NCBI RefSeq assembly: GCF_963853765.1
Contig: NC_088857.1
Location: forward strand, 6,386,001-6,450,000
Direction of reading: 5' to 3'
Origin: Magallana gigas
Taxonomy: Eukaryota
DNA: 64,000 nt
Made by a program: the position numbers and the translations under genes
The notes under the pieces: model-generated
What the model was told of the DNA's origin: nothing
Database searches by the model: none
What the model saw: only the letters and a program-made list of their open reading frames with translations
Part shown: in pieces, positions 54,250 through 62,319 of the stretch
Layout of the letters: the number at the start of each line of letters is the position of its first letter
Numbering within the stretch: the first letter of the stretch is position 1

Positions 54250-54671
54250 CTAATTATCTTCATGTGTGAAACGATTTGTGGTTTAAAATTTAATGGAATG
54301 TTTATGCAAGTGTTGGAAGAACACAATCAGTATGAGTAAAAATTGAATGTTGATTATGACATCATTTATTTAATACCACAACATGTAAACATGCAGATCT
54401 CTTTATATACTAATAACGTATTGCTGACTGTGTAGTTTGTCACATTACCTTGTTGAGTCAAAATAAGGAACAGAAACATCTTTCTAGAGACTACAGCAGT
54501 TTATTTTATCATAAATGGTCGTTTTTATGAGACTCCTTTTGTTTGGAGATCAGTATGTATATATGTATACATGAAGAATTCCACTATGTTTGAATCCTAC
54601 ATAAATGAAAGTCAAGTAGTATCATTGCAAGGAATGGACCTTATTTAAACAATCGAACAGATGTTCATAAT

Positions 54672-57214
54672 CTATCCTCCTCGTCCTCCTCGTCCTCCGC
54701 GTCCTCCACGTTGTGACCGTGCCTCCAACATGGCGGTCATATACTGCTCCTCGCAGACGACAAGGGCTTTAAAGAGGGTGATTAGTTTATCGTTCCGTAA
54801 AGACATGGCCATGAGTTTCCACAAGTCGTACATGTCGCCAGACAGGCAGGGCGTGGAGCGGGCGGCAATCGTCTTCTGCAGACATTCGTTAGAGCAGGTC
54901 GCTGTGTTGTCGCAGCCCGTCATGTCATACAGCGGGTCGTTGTGTAGGGCCAGCATGAACCCACGGTACGTACACCCAAACACGGAGTCCCCGATCTCCA
55001 GCGCACACAGAGGGATGTTCTTGAAGCTTTCACAGTGGTGGTCGTCCCAGTTCTCCCTTGGGTAGTAGATGAGGATGGTTTTACACAGTTCCTGTTTGGG
55101 CCCCATTCCCCACGTGATATCATCACGTACGCCCACTGTGTTATACTCACATGTCAGCTTCAACATGTCACCTGGGAGGACCGGTACGGGGGTAGTGTAC
55201 CTGTTTTGTATAGAGAGCTAAAAGATACAGCATCTCTCTAATGAAATACAAGTACACAAATTTCTCATTTGGGATAAATGAGTATTTCGGAACAAAGTCG
55301 TGAAATTAAATAAAACTTTCTTATCCTTGAAAATTCACTGATACGGTACAAATTTCAATTCAAAATTTGACATCTTTTTCAATTTTCAGTGTTATCACGT
55401 TAGTAAAATATGATATATATAAATTCATATAAATCTATAATTTACAGTTCAATGCAGCTCTGTATTTAATAACACACTGACACTGACCAGAACACTCTTG
55501 GATTATACACGTCATATTTGGTGTCTTCTGTTATGGAGTTGTAGATCCTGTCGTTTCTTTCAACATCAACCCTTTGTTTAACCCCTGAAGATATAAAATA
55601 CTGATTCTTTAATCAACCTTTACTTAATTGTAATGAGAAGTATGGTTGTGACGTATCTCGCTACATACCATAGTGTCCCATGATGTTGACTCCCGCCACA
55701 ACCGTCACAGGTGACCTCATCTGAAACTGTGTGCACGAGCTGGGACAAGCAGACGACACCGAGTAGCTGGGGAGATTTCCGGGAATGCTGAAGTGTGTCT
55801 CCTCCAGGATAGCTACACCTGCGTTATACTTCTTCAGGTTCGGTGTCAGGTACAAAGACATTCCGGCGTTTGTTGTACCAGGCTCTTTCAGTGGGTTTAG
55901 GAACGTCCACTACAAAATTAAGTTTGTTTTGTTTTTAAAGAAACCACACTGATTTTCAATGCCATTCCTTGCAAGTCGGAAGAACTAATAACTTTATAAT
56001 ATGTATTACCTTCATCAGGACTTGTTTGTATCCCGTTTGGCCTATTAAAAGACCGACATCCCTTGGGAAACAGTTGCCCTGGTCCATTTCACCTTGGTCC
56101 ATGATTGCTATCAAGTCCTGGCATGGTTTAGCGACAGAAGAGGAACATTCAAACACCGACTTCCTTGTTATCTCGCCAGAGTTTGGGTCTACAAACAAAA
56201 TATGAGTTAAAACGCGGCAAAATGCATCCGTGAAAAGAATTCCACACAAAAAGATGAAAAAGATCTAACCACTTACTGCAACCATAAACCGCCACTTGCC
56301 CCAGAAGTTTATGCTGATAGTTGATTGGTTTAGATGCTATCACGTGATAGTCAGTTTTCACGGGTAAATCAAAAATTCGACATGCAAAGGTTGATTCCCT
56401 CAGAGGTATGGAATAGTTAACAAGGAACATGTCATACTTCTGCACACCTGTATTCAAAAATGAAAAAGTAAACATTTTCAAATCAGATTATTTATTTTCA
56501 AGGAATGGAAATTTAGAAAATAGTGAAGAGATGTAATGTAACCTGGTTCGTCTATTTGTTCGCAGTCTGTGGACACTTTGTCAGCACTGCAGTCCAGCGA
56601 GGCGTTCATTGCCTGACATGTAGGGCTATCCCAGGGCTCACAGACTCCTGTGTGAGACAAAAACATCTAAAATAGTATTGAGCTTATAGACATTGGTGGC
56701 TGAATCAATGTTATTGTAACAAACACACGGACCAACAACTTCTCTAAGATTTCCAGAAAAATAAAGCAAAAGCACAGTGGTGAGTTGCTGCCATATGTCA
56801 ATACTAATAGTATATTTACATATGCTTTTTTATTTTGATATCATTGTCAAAAGTACTTTGTATAGGCTTTCAAGAGTGTTATTCTTTCGTGTGTCGTGGC
56901 TTTTTCATTTATGCATGTGCAAGGAATACGTTACAACATATACCTGTACCTACAGCCTGTACACACCTTTTGAAGGCTTTATTGTCTCACCTGTTGAGAT
57001 GACTTTGCAAGAATAACAAATTCACTAATGGGCACTTTGTGTATCCTCGATCGTGTCTTGTTTACATTTAATCAAACGGTTCTTTGAATATTCATTAATG
57101 ATAAATTGCATCACCAGTTCACCTAGCCAGCCATGTCATTTTTAACATGTACTTGTAGCACTATACGTGTGTTGTTTAGCTTATTGATTACTTAAAGTTT
57201 ATGCACTTTAAGTT

Positions 57215-57294
<80 letters not shown>

Positions 57295-59726
57295 ATCATT
57301 ACAAAGTAAAATTGTGTCGTAACACAGGACTGTATTATTAGATAGGAGGCACATATATATGTAAATATATGCCAGGCACTTGACACAGTGTCGTAATTGC
57401 AAATTACAATAAAACTTAATTACAGTGATTAAATTATTGATAAGTAATGTCTTGCTTTAAATATCTATACTATTATTACAATTAATATATTTGTTAGTCA
57501 CTCTAACAACCAGTCATATAATTGCTAATCTATATTCGATAATTTCTGCATGCTTATATTTATGGCCGAGTGATGATTACATTTAATGTTTAAATCATGA
57601 TTACAATTAGTGATAAAGTTATTATTTCATTTAGTCATAATATCATGATTACATTAAATTTTCAAGTCTTGATTAGTTTAGTGACTAAGTCAGGATTATA
57701 TCTAACGTTTAAACTTTGATTTTATTTAATGTTTAAGTTTTGATTACCTTTAGTGATAAATTCATTATTACATTTTATGTTTAAGTCATAATTACAATTA
57801 GTGATAAAGTCATTAGACTCTTTTGTGATTAAGCAATGAATACATTTTGTGATATAATCATGAATAAATAATGTTAAACCACGGTTACATTTATGATTCC
57901 CATACCATGAATACATTAACGTTTAAATCATGGTCTTTTTTAATGGTCTAGTAATTATTACATTTAATGTTTAAGTAATGATATCGATTTTATTTAAGGA
58001 AGTCATTATAACACTAAATAATCAAATCATATTTACATTTACAATTAATGATCAAGTCATGATTACATATACAAGTAAAGGTTAAGTCATTATTATATTC
58101 AATGTTTAAACTGAACGCTATGATAACAATTTTGATAACATAGTATTACATTTAACGTGATGACATGATTATATTTAGTAGTTTTGTCGCAATCACAGTG
58201 AATATCGGGTTTGCATATCACGAACATTTTTCATCTCTGTGTTGATGCATGCTATGATTTATTGTTGGTTCAAAATTTTAAACAAGTGGCATGATAACTT
58301 TGTATGCATCCAGAACTTTAAAGCAGTCTCAATGCTGTTATAGCTCCACTCAATGTTTCTCGTTATTCAGACTTGACAAATTACCTCGCGATGTTTACCG
58401 ACCCCTACGTCATGCATATAGTATACTAGTATACTTCATGGTAAAGCTTTCTTTGAATCATTGTACGAGCCATGCCGCGGATCAAGGGGTCATGATTTTT
58501 TTAATTCACATAGCAAAATTACTGAAGATATGCCTTGGACCCCCCCCCCCCCCGGAAACACATTTAACCATTTAACATTTTACAGTTGTGTTTAAAGTCT
58601 TGTATTAATTTAGTATACCTGGGTGGGAGAAAGCCGGAAGGCTGAGGTTTCTGTTGGAAGTGGACCATTCACAGTTAGGGTCCCCTAATTCCAGTCCATT
58701 GTATTTCCCGTCCCCATCAGAATCCAGGCGGCAGATGTCGCTCCATATCTATTGGGAGGTCAAATAGGTGTTAGATTTAGTACAGGTATCCAAATGAATT
58801 GGTAAGAATTTACCCTAGTAGTAATGGGTAAGGAATATTAAGTATATGTGCATGTATTTTACCTTTCTCATTGTTTTATCATTCCTATATCCGACCTATA
58901 CAAAATCGTTATGCAAGTACCCCCTCTCCCCTTTCCAAAAGAAAGGTTCTAAAGAAAGCCCCAAAAGCCTCCACAAAAAAATATCTTTAGTTTAAACTCT
59001 CTCTCATGCCCGGACACTACACTGAAGTTAATTTTCAGGGTCAGGATGGGGGGGGGGGGGGGGGGGGGGTTGAGGGGCTAGTCTACTTCACAACAAAGCT
59101 CAGGTGATGTAAATGAGATTTCATATAAAATATCAAAATGTGAGTAAATGTATATAATAACGATATAATCTAAATGAATAATTCAGTCAAGAGACTCCAT
59201 TTGTCTATAATTGAAAAATCCATGCACTTATGGTTTAATATTAATTCCCTTTACTTACTACCGTTTTATATATATTTACCTGTACATTAACTGTCAACGT
59301 TCGGGATGTACATGTAATAAAACATTCATGCTGGGAAACGAGTAATGACGTACACTGATTACCATTGACAATGACTGTAACAAGCTGGTCACTGACCACA
59401 AAACTCTAGCGAGGACGGAATAACCCAGGACTGTCTGACCACTCACAAGATTCAAACTCACTGCTGTCGCTCAGTGGAGGAATATTTCAATTAAACATGT
59501 AGTTATTAAGAATTATTTCACCTACCTTATTAGCTTTAATAAAATCATGTCCGAACTGGTTTCTTGGTCCTGACCCGTAAGGTCCTAAGTGGCCAACCCC
59601 GTTCCATATGAGGGAGGGGTTACAGGGGTTGGGCACTTTATCTCCGTTAGGGATCAGGTCGTTGTACGTGGGCCATCCTCGAGCGACCGGTATCAAGAAA
59701 AAACCTATCAAACCCAACACGTGCAT
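54672..59726 (-). CDS. Secreted temptin-domain + copper type II ascorbate-dependent monooxygenase-like (DBH/MOXD1 fold) protein, probably catalytically inactive (about 550 aa)
   Basis: Exons 59726-59526, 58748-58619, 56647-56543, 56447-56277, 56188-56010, 55909-55669, 55584-55488, 55200-54672, all in phase. Signal peptide MHVLGLIGFFLIPVARG. Temptin motifs IPNG..VP.PC...W.GVGH...G.G.RN.FG.DF and C.LDSDGDGK.NG.ELGDPNC.W...SHPG. Monooxygenase motifs AC.IFDLP...YHVIA..P, VYGC, PGD.LKLTC.YNT, G.G...ELC...L.YYP. Confidence 0.87.
57218..57290. repeat. (TA)n microsatellite
   Basis: Direct observation. Confidence 0.95.
57400..58170. repeat. Degenerate AT-rich tandem repeat (ATTACATTTAATGTTTAAATCATG-like)
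   Basis: Recurrent attacatt/aatgtttaa/gtcat motifs in intron 2 of the temptin-monooxygenase gene. Confidence 0.5.
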
Positions 59727-61137
59727 TCTCGGCTCTTGTGTCAGAATTCGTCCTAGCTATAGCTTACTTCTTTTTCTGATGTTAATTCATGCAAAAGGAC
59801 TAATCACTCAAAGTAATTAATTGGACTGCGCATGATGTACTTGTGAAAGTTTTATGCACAAAGTTGTGAAACGATAAATAAAACGTTAAATATAGGCTGA
59901 GACTCGTTTCGCGTTGAATGGAAAAAAAGTTTTTAGTCACTCAGTTTCGAAGCCACAGTACTCGTCCCTTCTTTATTCTAATACATTGCTAAAAATTGTT
60001 CTTTCCATCATAAACATTTATTCAGTGTATGTGAAATGAGAATGCTACAATTGTTAGCTGAACGATAAAGATGGTAATTTTTAGGAATAATAAACAATTT
60101 AGGCGTTGTCAACTTATAATGCAACTATATTTAAAGGCACAATCTGCCATTATTATAAATCATATAAAAATGCTAGATTCAGAACAGAGCCATGTCTTAA
60201 TTAATTCATTTAAATCAGACTTTAAAACACCTAACTCTAATGTTGACTTTAAGATCATTAGTTTTAACAATATGAAAAAAAAATGAAATATGTCAGTATA
60301 TTTAAAAAATAATAAATATTAACCCCAAAAAGTATCAAATGTAGAGTTGTTTGTGTTGCTAATTAGGATATGCAGTTCTGAAAATAGAGTATACCTTTCT
60401 TCGAAATCCTAATTCCTAGGCCTACAGGATCGACACTCAAACCGATAAAAAAATATAGTTATGCATTTTATTATGAAAACCATGTTTATCATAAATGACA
60501 TTACTTCTCTAATAAAATATATATCGAATTCCTCATTGATACTGCTGTCAGTGCTTCTTACTGACAATGTGGGTTAATTTTCTGCAACTTCAATGTTTAA
60601 AAACTTTTATGAACGGATTTTATTATAAAACTTATTGATAATAAAAAGAAGTTCATTATTGAATTTTTTCTAGCTCTTTTCAATGACACACAAAATAAAG
60701 AAAGGTGAAAATGAAACCTTTTGACTTTTGAGCGTTAACCAGTGCATAAATATCATGAATGATGAACTGTCGCTACCAAAAATGGAAGAGATTCCCAATT
60801 TAAGTATATATACAACATATAACATATAATTTAAGATGTGCTAAAAACAAATTCACAAAATGGTCATCATACTTTGTGTACGCAATTAGTTAATTAGTTT
60901 ATATACCCATTTAATGTTTTAAAGATTTTGAAGTTTGCAAGTGCACTTAAAGCAGTACAAAATTCAAAGAACTAAGTTCATAAGTATAATATCATTGCAA
61001 AAACTCAGCACAATCATGTGTACAGTTGATGTGTATACATCTAAAAGATATATGGTACATGAATATTGTGTACGTGTCATCAATAATATTACACTTCCTG
61101 GCGAATTGGTTTACACCTGTACACAAATTCAAAGTTA

Positions 61138-62319
61138 TCATCCCATAATTTTTTCCAGAAATTTAACCCAAAAAGGTACGTTCCCTGCTTTCTTTTCTCC
61201 TCGAAGACGAATTTTGTCAAGCGAACCTTTAAATAATGGGCTTCGAACACAAGTTCCATCCGATTTATCCATACGATATCCTCGCCTGCAGCCACAAGAA
61301 TACGAGCCGACTGTATTCCTACAGATCTTGTCTTCAGCACACTGCCCCACCTGATCATAACACTCGTCCTGGTCTATGCACAGAGAGAACCGGGAACTCC
61401 ACACGTGTCCCGGCTTCTCTGAGGCACAGTCACACGAGAAGTTTAATCTGTTGCGGGTCATGTCCTCAAAATCCACGTTTTGTCCTTCGCTCCACGTACA
61501 CGCCTTGTTTTTTAGTGTTTTACATGGGTTTAGTGGGTCCTCTGGAGCAGATATTTCGTCTCTCACGTTTCCCATTGAACTTTTGCCGTAACACGGATCC
61601 GGACAGAACCACAGGAAGGCACAGGTCCACAAAGAGACCCATTCCGACTGGTTCCCCCCGTACTGGGATCTAAAGTCGACCACGGTTCTATTAGCTGCTT
61701 CTACCGTCATTGACAAAGAATCAAGACATCCATCTGCCTTATCGTCTACAAATCGTAAGAGAGGACTTTTCAGTTCTGTAAACCAACACATGTAATACGC
61801 AGCGGTGGCGCGATAGCGAAATATATCAAGTTCGGATTCGAATGGCCAGAAATTGTGTCGCTTGGCAAGCTTCTCCTTTCCTTGAATTTTACTCACAGAT
61901 TTTGAGTCACGAGCTTTCTTGAAAATTTCGTTGATACATGCCAGTTCACTCTCCTCACACGCAAGAGTCAAACTTGGCTCCATCTGTACGATTCGTGGAT
62001 TAGGAAAATGTTTATGGAGCCCTCCTTTTCTTTGGATTTTACCTCTGATTTGTCGTGGATCCACTGCAAAGTATTTGTGAGCCGCCAGAAATGGTCCTAC
62101 TATTTTTAGCTTCTGTCTCACTGGGCTCATAAGGATATCTTTAACTTTGGGATCGTCTCTTGAAATGGGATGAACCCAGCTAACTTTTGGCTTTTTGGTA
62201 GGTCCAAGTGCATTATTCGAAATGGTTTTGTTCGTTTCCGTTGTCTGGTTTACAACGAATTTCCACAATGAAATTGAGAAAACCAGGCACCATATAAAAG
62301 AGCTGCTTATCGTTCGCAT
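61138..62319 (-). CDS. Intronless 393-aa secreted or signal-anchored Cys-rich protein with one C-terminal calcium-binding EGF domain; family unassigned
   Basis: Uninterrupted ORF with a hydrophobic N-terminus (FIWCLVFSISLWKFVV) and cbEGF consensus CIDQDEC...C...C.NTVGSYSC.C..GY. Balanced composition, unlike the repeat-derived ORFs in the track. Confidence 0.85.
   Translation of the reverse strand: MRTISSSFIWCLVFSISLWKFVVNQTTETNKTISNNALGPTKKPKVSWVHPISRDDPKVKDILMSPVRQKLKIVGPFLAAHKYFAVDPRQIRGKIQRKGGLHKHFPNPRIVQMEPSLTLACEESELACINEIFKKARDSKSVSKIQGKEKLAKRHNFWPFESELDIFRYRATAAYYMCWFTELKSPLLRFVDDKADGCLDSLSMTVEAANRTVVDFRSQYGGNQSEWVSLWTCAFLWFCPDPCYGKSSMGNVRDEISAPEDPLNPCKTLKNKACTWSEGQNVDFEDMTRNRLNFSCDCASEKPGHVWSSRFSLCIDQDECYDQVGQCAEDKICRNTVGSYSCGCRRGYRMDKSDGTCVRSPLFKGSLDKIRLRGEKKAGNVPFWVKFLEKIMG

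What the first reader, a model, noticed from the sequence alone, without database searches (positions are those of the whole stretch)
54672..59726. Temptin-fused copper monooxygenase that has lost all six copper ligands (secreted pseudoenzyme)
DBH/MOXD1/PHM enzymes need CuH (His-His, His) and CuM (His-x-His, Met); this is established. In this intact 8-exon ORF the aligned positions read LLGQVAVYGC instead of xxHHxxxxxC (GQ at 56301-56296) and LMKWTFLNP instead of LQxHWNNP (Thr at 55906-55904). They also read NIMGHYG instead of NHMHxLG (55684-55676) and QELC instead of xEMC (Leu at 55088-55086). The signal peptide, cysteine scaffold, calcium-binding temptin motif (DSDGDGKYNGLELGDPNC) and splice sites are all preserved, which argues against a pseudogene. 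Temptin is known as an Aplysia pheromone-complex protein. Inference: a catalytically dead monooxygenase fold repurposed as a secreted binding, scaffold or signalling protein (pheromone, mucus, shell matrix or ligand carrier). This is the best candidate for an undescribed system in the window.
Basis: partly seen in the sequence, partly recalled or inferred. Interest (0 to 1): 0.8.

Follow-up and report, generated by a model that had tools for sequence, protein, structure and literature searches.

The report
Copper-less temptin-fused monooxygenase paralogue
This oyster gene encodes a secreted relative of the dopamine beta-hydroxylase type of copper enzyme that has lost all six copper-holding residues, yet is expressed, correctly spliced and strongly conserved, so it is most likely a non-catalytic descendant of an enzyme.

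Summary
Window 54672-59726 (minus strand) holds an intact 8-exon, 550-aa gene. Its parts are a signal peptide, a temptin domain, the two domains of the PHM/DBH copper monooxygenase core, a Cys-rich helical tail and an RGG repeat. All seven introns are confirmed by transcript contigs from three studies and by raw RNA junction reads. The six copper-ligand positions read G195, Q196, T264 / I338, G340, L413 instead of H,H,H / H,H,M. The predicted fold is still that of PHM/DBH (pLDDT 91).

The gene is one of eight temptin-fused paralogues in this genome. Six keep all ligands and one keeps two of six. It belongs to a pteriomorph-bivalve clade in which every sampled member has degenerate ligands. Oysters and the pearl oyster have 0/6; mussels and scallops have 2-4/6. 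Against the Saccostrea orthologue, dN/dS is about 0.05-0.11, though dS is saturated. The temptin domain and the cysteine scaffold are fully kept, and decay is confined to the active-site shell.

Best reading: an ancient, selected, secreted pseudoenzyme, that is, a copper-free binding or scaffold protein. Its actual role is unproven. Relatives occur in mantle transcripts and in abalone nacre. It is a new variant of a known kind. Automatic annotation already calls it "MOXD1 homolog 1-like". I found no paper that notes the ligand loss.

The parts
54423..59767 (-). Whole transcription unit (5'UTR to 3'UTR) as far as transcript contigs reach
   Evidence: L027 aligns up to 59767. The contig of run X1 reaches down to 54423.
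59526..59726 (-). Exon 1: start codon, signal peptide (residues 1-17, MHVLGLIGFFLIPVARG) and the first half of the temptin domain
   Evidence: (Temptin_C 50.7 bits). No other hydrophobic segment is present in the protein.
58619..58748 (-). Exon 2: second half of the temptin domain, including the invariant DSDGDG..NG.ELGDP.C calcium-type loop (58724-58671)
   Evidence: The domain is 54% identical to Aplysia temptin Q7Z0T3 over 98 aligned residues.
56543..56647 (-). Exon 3: Cys-rich linker between the temptin domain and the catalytic-type core
   Evidence: All 5 conserved linker columns are kept.
56277..56447 (-). Exon 4: first half of the CuH-type domain. The former CuH His-His pair now reads G195 Q196 (56301-56296).
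56010..56188 (-). Exon 5: second half of the CuH-type domain
55669..55909 (-). Exon 6: end of the CuH-type domain and start of the CuM-type domain. The former third CuH His is now T264 (55906-55904). The former CuM H-x-H now reads I338-M-G340 (55684-55676).
55488..55584 (-). Exon 7: middle of the CuM-type domain
54672..55200 (-). Exon 8: end of the CuM-type domain (former CuM Met is now L413, 55088-55086), the conserved Cys-rich helical C-terminal domain and the stop codon. There is no hydrophobic C-terminal anchor.
54675..54711 (-). C-terminal RGG repeat (9-nt unit). The window has four RGG; the transcript L027 and the C. angulata protein have two.
   Evidence: TRF; comparison of the 3' ends

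Best explanation
The gene encodes a soluble, secreted, copper-free descendant of a temptin-domain DBH/MOXD1-like monooxygenase, that is, a pseudoenzyme. Shown: the gene is intact, spliced as modelled and transcribed. Its product keeps the N-terminal temptin module, the cysteine scaffold, the predicted two-beta-sandwich PHM/DBH core and the C-terminal helical domain. It has none of the three CuH histidines and none of the CuM His-His-Met. The loss is old, being shared with Saccostrea and Pinctada, and their mussel and scallop orthologues show intermediate states. The protein has since evolved under strong purifying selection, no faster than an intact paralogue. Inferred: (a) it binds no catalytic copper and cannot hydroxylate. 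In PHM, single substitutions of these ligands already empty the CuH site; the activity loss of such mutants is from my own knowledge. (b) It is exported through its signal peptide and released, because it lacks the C-terminal hydrophobic anchor that most intact relatives carry. (c) It works by binding rather than by turnover. The temptin module probably provides Ca2+-dependent protein association, as proposed for Aplysia temptin. The emptied interdomain cleft or the beta-sandwich surfaces probably hold a ligand or a matrix component. My most likely setting is mantle or epithelial secretion into the extracellular or shell organic matrix (about 35%). The alternatives are a carrier or decoy for the substrates or partners of the active paralogues, or a water-borne signal.
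For: Gene model and splicing. Domains. Ligand columns. Fold: AF2 pLDDT 91; Foldseek DBH 4zel E 1e-25; PHM TM 0.77-0.80 normalised by target. Selection: against Saccostrea (same 8-exon structure), dN is 0.13-0.15 and dS 1.3-2.5, giving omega 0.06 (NG86), 0.08 (ML) and 0.11 (LWL85). Omega is low in every domain where it could be computed; dS is too saturated in the C-terminal tail. Pattern of decay: of 100 columns at least 88% conserved in intact members, the protein keeps 81. It keeps 39/39 in temptin, 5/5 in the linker and 8/8 in the tail. 19 of 48 core columns are changed, including all ligands and neighbours such as W265, D275 and S277. Former ligand sites now vary between the two oyster genera at 4 of 6 positions (GQ/T/I/G/L against KK/T/V/R/L). 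Phylogeny: the ten ligand-degenerate bivalve proteins form one clade (FastTree 98, IQ-TREE SH-aLRT 93). The orthologue subclade has support 99 and follows the species tree. The path length Crassostrea-Saccostrea is 0.24, against 0.33 for an intact paralogue pair. Genome context: there are 8 temptin-fused loci; six read HHHHHM, one reads GGKHHI, and this one has 0/6. Ordinary non-fused DBH/PHM-type loci exist elsewhere. PDB titles record empty CuH sites in the H107A and H172A PHM mutants. No anchor. [quoted passage not shown] A 'DBH-like' secreted candidate is differentially expressed in M. gigas mantle (PMC11464482).
Against: No biochemical data exist, so absence of copper and of activity is inferred from sequence. 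I could not inspect model coordinates, so a rebuilt site from oyster-specific histidines (H191, H341, H429, H430, conserved in Crassostrea and Saccostrea only) is not structurally excluded. dS is saturated, so omega is approximate. Tissue of expression is unknown because run and sample names are coded. The gene did not appear under a recognisable name in the mantle differential-expression table that I searched. The shell-matrix link therefore rests on relatives, not on this gene.
Confidence: 0.8

Rival explanations
1. It is still a redox enzyme. A new metal site, copper or another metal, has been rebuilt from other residues, or the fold now supports different chemistry.
For: Four histidines outside the classical positions (H191, H341, H429, H430) are conserved between Crassostrea and Saccostrea. 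The fold and the cleft are predicted intact. The next structural neighbours after PHM/DBH are PNGase F entries, which shows that the fold can host other chemistry.
Against: None of those histidines is conserved in the Pinctada orthologue, and only H180 and H301 are shared by the ligand-less trio in the core. Former ligand sites drift freely between orthologues. Second-shell residues that are invariant in intact members are also lost. The PNGase F matches are weak (TM 0.25-0.38).
Confidence: 0.05
2. It is a decaying gene, a young or polymorphic pseudogene that merely still has an open frame.
For: Loss of all catalytic residues is what a dying enzyme gene would show first.
Against: The frame is intact and the splice sites are canonical. 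Transcripts appear in at least four studies. The exon structure and the open frame are the same in Saccostrea. Omega is about 0.05-0.11. Full-length orthologues exist in Pinctada, Mytilus and scallops. The temptin, cysteine and tail columns are perfectly retained.
Confidence: 0.02
3. It is a non-catalytic regulator of the active paralogues. It could be a decoy that sequesters their substrate or reductant, or a partner that pairs with them through the conserved C-terminal domain, much as DBH dimerises through its C-terminal domain.
For: The C-terminal domain is fully conserved with the intact members (8/8 columns). Six intact paralogues are encoded in the same genome. DBH is a disulfide-linked dimer or tetramer through a C-terminal helical domain (PMC4846438).
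Against: Most intact relatives appear membrane- or GPI-anchored, while this clade is soluble, so co-localisation is not assured. No co-expression or interaction data exist. Foldseek did not align the tail to the DBH dimerisation domain. No complex prediction was run.
Confidence: 0.12
4. It is a water-borne or mucus-borne chemical signal or signal carrier, like Aplysia temptin in the attractin pheromone complex.
For: The N-terminal module is 54% identical to Aplysia temptin over 98 aligned residues, about three quarters of its 125 aa. The protein is soluble and secreted. Temptin-like proteins are found in snail trail mucus and attract Biomphalaria (papers listed; PMC10075465).
Against: Known pheromonal temptins are small stand-alone proteins of about 100 aa. 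All eight fused paralogues share the same temptin module, so the module itself does not single out a signalling role. No behavioural or secretome evidence exists.
Confidence: 0.08

Closest known systems
[quoted passage not shown]
   Same: Both Pfam core domains score above the cut-off. The predicted two-beta-sandwich core superposes on DBH (E 1e-25) and PHM (TM about 0.78 by target). The core cysteines and the motif frames (..VYGC, W.F.NP, N.M..YG.E.C) are conserved. The protein has a signal peptide and a C-terminal extra domain.
   Different: All six copper ligands are replaced. A temptin module stands in place of the DOMON domain. There is no membrane or GPI-type C-terminus. It is therefore not expected to be an enzyme.
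Ligand-intact temptin-fused paralogues (for example C. angulata 'DBH-like monooxygenase protein 2 homolog' P0174, Mya arenaria P0025, Aplysia 'dopamine beta hydroxylase-like protein' P0156)
   Same: Identical domain order (Temptin_C, Cu2_monooxygen, Cu2_monoox_C, Cys-rich tail). They share 30-34% identity, the same invariant temptin loop and the same cysteines.
   Different: They read HH-H-H-H-M at the ligand columns, and most end in a hydrophobic anchor-like tail. The window protein has neither.
Aplysia californica temptin (Q7Z0T3), a water-borne pheromone-complex protein
   Same: The window protein's residues 18-111 match residues 23-117 of the 125-aa temptin at 54% identity (Foldseek E 3.7e-10, TM 0.64-0.66). 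The DSDxD calcium-type loop is shared.
   Different: Temptin is a stand-alone small protein. Here the module is the N-terminal domain of a 550-aa protein.
[quoted passage not shown]
   Same: It has the same double similarity (temptin plus TBH/DBH-like), a signal peptide and an R/G-rich C-terminal region, and it is found in a secreted shell matrix.
   Different: It comes from a gastropod.
Engineered PHM ligand mutants (H107A, H108A, H172A, M314I; PDB 6alv, 6ala, 6amp, 1yi9)
   Same: Each has one of the substitutions that this protein combines. The entry titles record an empty CuH site in H107A and H172A.
   Different: Those are single laboratory mutations in an otherwise active enzyme. Here all six positions plus second-shell residues changed naturally and the protein was kept by selection.

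Membership tests
[quoted passage not shown] | Pfam PF01082 and PF03712 above the gathering score | tested here: met
   44.7 bits (cut-off 30) and 50.7 bits (cut-off 23) on P0152, which is 99.6% identical to the window protein.
[quoted passage not shown] | Two-domain beta-sandwich catalytic-core fold | tested here: met
   AF2 model with pLDDT 91. Foldseek gives 4zel at E 1e-25 and PHM entries at TM 0.77-0.80 by target. This is a predicted structure, not a solved one.
[quoted passage not shown] | CuH site: three histidines (PHM H107, H108, H172; DBH H262, H263, H333) | tested here: not met
   The positions read G195, Q196 and T264. DBH ligands are as given in PMC4846438.
[quoted passage not shown] | CuM site: His-x-His plus Met (PHM H242, H244, M314; DBH H412, H414, M487) | tested here: not met
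   The positions read I338, G340 and L413.
[quoted passage not shown] | Copper binding and ascorbate/O2-dependent hydroxylation | not testable with these tools
   Needs recombinant protein, ICP-MS and activity assays.
Temptin domain proteins | Pfam Temptin_C above the cut-off, with the invariant DSDGDG..NG.ELGDP.C loop | tested here: met
   110 bits (cut-off 27). The loop is invariant in 60 of 60 aligned family members. The domain is 54% identical to Aplysia temptin.
Temptin domain proteins | Ca2+ binding and pheromone-complex activity | not testable with these tools
   Claimed for Aplysia and Biomphalaria temptin in the literature cited in PMC10075465. No solved structure resembles the domain.
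Pseudoenzyme (non-catalytic homologue kept by selection) | Clear homologue of an enzyme family that lacks the residues essential for catalysis | tested here: met
Pseudoenzyme (non-catalytic homologue kept by selection) | Expressed and under purifying selection, with orthologues conserved across species | tested here: met
   Transcripts and junctions. Omega 0.05-0.11. Orthologue clade.
Molluscan shell matrix / mantle secretome protein | Signal peptide and no membrane anchor | tested here: met
   The N-terminal h-region is followed by ARG|W. No other hydrophobic window is present. This was judged by inspection, not with a dedicated predictor.
Molluscan shell matrix / mantle secretome protein | Mantle-enriched expression or detection in shell, mucus or seawater proteomes | not tested
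   Run metadata are coded. Only relatives have such evidence.

The most novel reading that the evidence does not exclude
The pteriomorph clade is a natural series in which a two-copper monooxygenase was dismantled stepwise. CuH is gone and CuM kept in mussels. CuM is half gone in scallops. Both are gone in oysters and pearl oysters. Over the same series the protein was released from the membrane and acquired a new, copper-independent extracellular function. That function would be, for example, a Ca2+-dependent organiser of the shell or mucus matrix, or a non-turnover binder of amines or peptides. Under this reading the mussel forms with an intact CuM site could be single-copper proteins with a distinct activity.
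Probability: 0.2. Interest if true: 0.65.

Novelty: new variant of a known kind. Interest (0 to 1): 0.45.

Why it matters
The PHM/DBH/MOXD1 family is usually treated as uniformly catalytic, and bivalve "DBH-like" genes are counted as monoamine-pathway enzymes. This gene and its clade show that some of those annotations are copper-free proteins that cannot make noradrenaline or octopamine. That matters for interpreting oyster neuroendocrine, copper-stress and biomineralisation transcriptomes.

The graded ligand loss across mussel, scallop, pearl oyster and oyster orthologues also offers a natural test set. It could show which copper site can be lost first, and what a PHM-type fold can do without metal.

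The wider temptin-monooxygenase family is sizeable and, as far as I could find, unstudied. It has eight genes here, runs lophotrochozoan-wide, and includes a cytochrome b561 fusion among metagenomic relatives. Its substrates are unknown.

Tried and rejected
- **Alternative splicing restoring ligands.** Rejected: one isoform with the modelled junctions is seen in all runs laid.
- **Misalignment of ligand columns.** Rejected: the motif frames (..VYGC, W.F.NP, N.M..YG.E.C) and the invariant M339, E412 and C414 anchor the columns.
They are not conserved in Pinctada.
- **Fold of the temptin domain.** Foldseek against PDB and a VIA-align wide search found nothing. Only Aplysia temptin matched in AFDB Swiss-Prot.
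- **Tissue of expression.** Run and sample names are coded, so no tissue could be assigned.
- **Literature.** I found no paper on natural ligand-less members of this family or on the temptin-monooxygenase fusion as such. The Peng et al. 2021 temptin paper is not held.
- **Earlier scan findings.** They hold nothing relevant beyond this same stretch.
- **Failed runs.** The first tree and alignment runs timed out and were repeated with faster settings.
- **Artefact.** In one search the 'own' row shows FM at the first two ligand columns. This comes from a tblastn match that read through an intron in the wrong frame; the spliced sequence gives GQ.
- **Not run.** No complex prediction was run, because I do not claim a specific partner.
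Full report
**1. What is there**

The minus strand of window 54672-59726 carries an 8-exon gene. The exons are 59726-59526, 58748-58619, 56647-56543, 56447-56277, 56188-56010, 55909-55669, 55584-55488 and 55200-54672. Every intron is GT..AG, and the joined CDS of 1653 nt translates without interruption into 550 residues.

A transcript contig from a public run (L027) encodes P0152, a 544-aa protein with two substitutions relative to my model plus a shorter RGG tail. It aligns to the window in exactly these eight blocks.

Transcript contigs of three further runs from three studies were laid on the window, together with raw polyA RNA reads of a fourth. These reproduced all seven joints (CT..AC on the plus strand). 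Contig word depths were 18-221. None of the few variant positions falls in a ligand codon.

**2. Domains and ligand positions**

Pfam finds Temptin_C, Cu2_monooxygen and Cu2_monoox_C, all above the curated cut-offs (110, 44.7 and 50.7 bits, exon-wise).

An intact relative (P0025, Mya arenaria) aligns to human DBH (4zel) and rat PHM. Its motifs MHHIIVYGC, EFHWNNP, NHMHTMG and DEMC lie on the known ligands. The DBH ligands are His262, His263 and His333 for CuH and His412, His414 and Met487 for CuM (PMC4846438).

In family alignments, 75 of about 100 full-length members read HH-H-H-H-M at these columns. The window protein reads G195, Q196, T264, I338, G340 and L413. The flanking invariant residues (C202, M339, E412, C414) fix the register.

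The protein has 24 cysteines and three N-glycosylation sequons. It has a 17-residue signal peptide and no other hydrophobic segment. The pI of the mature protein is about 5.5.

**3. Fold**

With a 60-sequence family alignment, AlphaFold2 gives mean pLDDT 91. Foldseek places the core on DBH (E 1e-25) and on some thirty PHM entries (TM 0.73-0.80 normalised by target). Unrelated jelly-roll proteins follow only far behind.

The temptin module was modelled alone (pLDDT 85). It has no counterpart among solved structures. It matches Aplysia temptin Q7Z0T3 at 54% identity over 98 aligned residues of that 125-aa protein. I could not inspect coordinates, so statements about site geometry are inferred from alignment only.

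**4. The family and this genome**

An exhaustive HMMER search with exon 8 found only 155 representatives. Word-based searches with full-length relatives returned named proteins from bivalves, gastropods, a brachiopod (Lingula) and an annelid (Owenia). All have the same three-domain architecture. They are variously auto-named DBH-like, MOXD1 homolog, tyramine beta-hydroxylase-like or, in UniRef, Temptin. The 90% cluster of P0152 contains XP_052688704.1, 'MOXD1 homolog 1-like' of Crassostrea (Magallana) angulata, which differs from the window protein at five residues. The window is therefore from an oyster of the gigas/angulata group; this is inference.

In the window's own genome, Pfam hits for the three domains co-localise at eight loci. 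Reading the ligand columns from tblastn matches gives the following:

| Loci | Ligand columns |
|---|---|
| Six loci | HHHHHM |
| C2:42.89 Mb | GGKHHI |
| The window gene | 0 of 6 |

Non-fused DBH/PHM-type loci also exist, so the animal does not depend on this gene for catalysis.

**5. Evolution**

The orthologues read as follows at the six columns:

| Protein | Species | Identity to window protein | Ligand columns |
|---|---|---|---|
| P0151 | Saccostrea cucullata | 81% | KK-T-V-R-L |
| P0003 | Pinctada imbricata | 49% | GG-I-I-N-V |
| P0153 | Mytilus edulis | 40% | HG-Q-H-H-M |
| P0004, P0164 | scallops | 37-38% | HH-L-Q/L-H-I |

A sister group (P0012, P0013, P0014/P0165) reads GGRHHI, SAHQNL and DQRHHM.

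Both a FastTree tree of 98 rows and an IQ-TREE quick tree of 44 rows put these ten proteins in one clade (support 98 and 93). The orthologue subclade has support 99 and a topology that follows pteriomorph phylogeny. Both are fast analyses; no AU test was run. A few isolated ligand losses occur elsewhere, in unionids and in a scallop paralogue.

The Saccostrea gene has the same eight exons, with near-identical lengths. It also has the same upstream EGF_CA neighbour.

Pairwise codon analysis gives dN 0.13-0.15 and dS 1.3-2.5, which is saturated. That corresponds to omega 0.06 (NG86), 0.08 (ML) and 0.11 (LWL85). Omega is 0.05-0.07 in the temptin, linker and both core domains; in the C-terminal tail dS was too saturated to compute. 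On the tree, the Crassostrea-Saccostrea path for this protein (0.24) is no longer than the path for an intact paralogue pair (0.33).

Of 100 columns at least 88% conserved among intact members, the window protein keeps 81. It keeps all 39 in the temptin domain, all 5 in the linker and all 8 in the tail. It keeps only 29 of 48 in the core, and the 19 changes include the six ligands and neighbouring residues. Four of the six former ligand positions differ between the two oyster genera, against about 20% divergence overall; my binomial estimate is p about 0.02.

Only H180 and H301 are shared by the ligand-less trio in the core.

**6. A further correlate**

47 of 70 intact members end in a hydrophobic, anchor-like C-terminus. 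Only 3 of 21 ligand-degenerate members do, and none in the window gene's orthologue group. Phylogeny confounds this count, but it fits a shift from a tethered enzyme to a soluble secreted protein.

**7. Function**

- **Shown:** the points above.
- **Inferred from established knowledge:** without the CuH histidines and the CuM His-His-Met the protein cannot bind the two catalytic coppers. PDB entries of the single mutants H107A and H172A are themselves described as lacking CuH. That M314I and H172A are nearly inactive is from my own knowledge of the PHM literature.
- **Inferred:** the protein is secreted and acts by binding.

Literature context comes from five sources:
- Cu2_monooxygen-domain and 'DBH-like' transcripts are among the secreted candidates differentially expressed between the two mantle lobes of M. 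gigas (PMC11464482).
- The 'DBH-like' gene LOC105321753 lies about 150 kb from Temptin-1. That spacing matches the own-genome pair C2:42.89 Mb (the GGKHHI paralogue) and C2:43.04 Mb (a temptin hit). The identification rests on spacing only.
- Stand-alone temptins are mantle-specific in zebra mussel and in the oyster (PMC9210306, PMC13664851).
- A 2026 preprint on bivalve monoamine enzymes simply counts 'several MOXD1 (DBH-like)' genes.

None of these papers notes a ligand-less clade, and my searches for one found nothing. The library covers only open papers.

**8. Verdict**

The fusion with temptin is a family trait, not a peculiarity of this gene. What is new is an old, selected, copper-free and anchor-free clade within that family, with partial-loss orthologues in mussels and scallops. 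Its role (matrix or scaffold protein, decoy, or signal) is open. I rate it a new variant of a known kind, of moderate interest.

Noticed in passing
window 61138-62319 (-): A single 393-aa ORF with a calcium-binding EGF domain (EGF_CA, 34 bits) lies directly upstream on the same strand. An EGF_CA gene occupies the same position in the Saccostrea locus L036, so microsynteny is conserved.
   Followed up: partly
window 54675-54711: The C-terminal RGG repeat (9-nt unit) has four copies in the window and in the contig of run X1. It has two copies in transcript L027 and in the C. angulata protein. This is a length polymorphism in a basic Gly-rich tail, reminiscent of the R/G-rich tail of the abalone nacre relative.
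   Followed up: partly
G000:C2:42889971-42895182 (locus L034): A second ligand-degenerate temptin-fused paralogue reads GG-K-H-H-I, so CuH is gone and the CuM Met is Ile. By its roughly 150 kb spacing from a stand-alone temptin gene, it probably corresponds to the mantle-expressed 'DBH-like' LOC105321753 of PMC11464482.
   Followed up: partly
P0208 (ENA metagenome protein, 678 aa); also P0209: P0208 is a natural fusion of Temptin_C, Cu2_monooxygen and Cu2_monoox_C with a cytochrome b561 domain and keeps all six ligands. It joins the monooxygenase to the kind of ascorbate-recycling electron carrier that serves DBH in chromaffin granules. P0209 has Temptin_C plus b561 only.
   Followed up: partly
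G000:C7:33053500-33102000 (loci L028, L029): Two ligand-intact temptin-fused paralogues lie about 39 kb apart on the same strand, which looks like a recent tandem duplication. A separate cluster of non-fused DBH-type hits lies at C2:60.87-60.91 Mb.
   Followed up: no
window 57205-58150 (intron 2): The intron holds an (AT)37 microsatellite and a degenerate 24/48-nt AT-rich tandem array of about 10 copies. A few raw RNA reads of the opposite orientation fall at 58040-58413.
   Followed up: no
family-wide (P0174, P0184, P0025, P0167 and others): Most ligand-intact temptin-fused monooxygenases end in a hydrophobic stretch of 15-20 residues that looks like a GPI signal or a tail anchor. This suggests that the presumed active enzymes are cell-surface tethered.
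   Followed up: partly
Temptin domain, window protein residues 18-146 (model mf18aba99dd99): The temptin domain models confidently (pLDDT 85) but resembles no solved structure, either by Foldseek against PDB or by an exhaustive VIA-align search. No solved structure was found that resembles this fold.
   Followed up: yes
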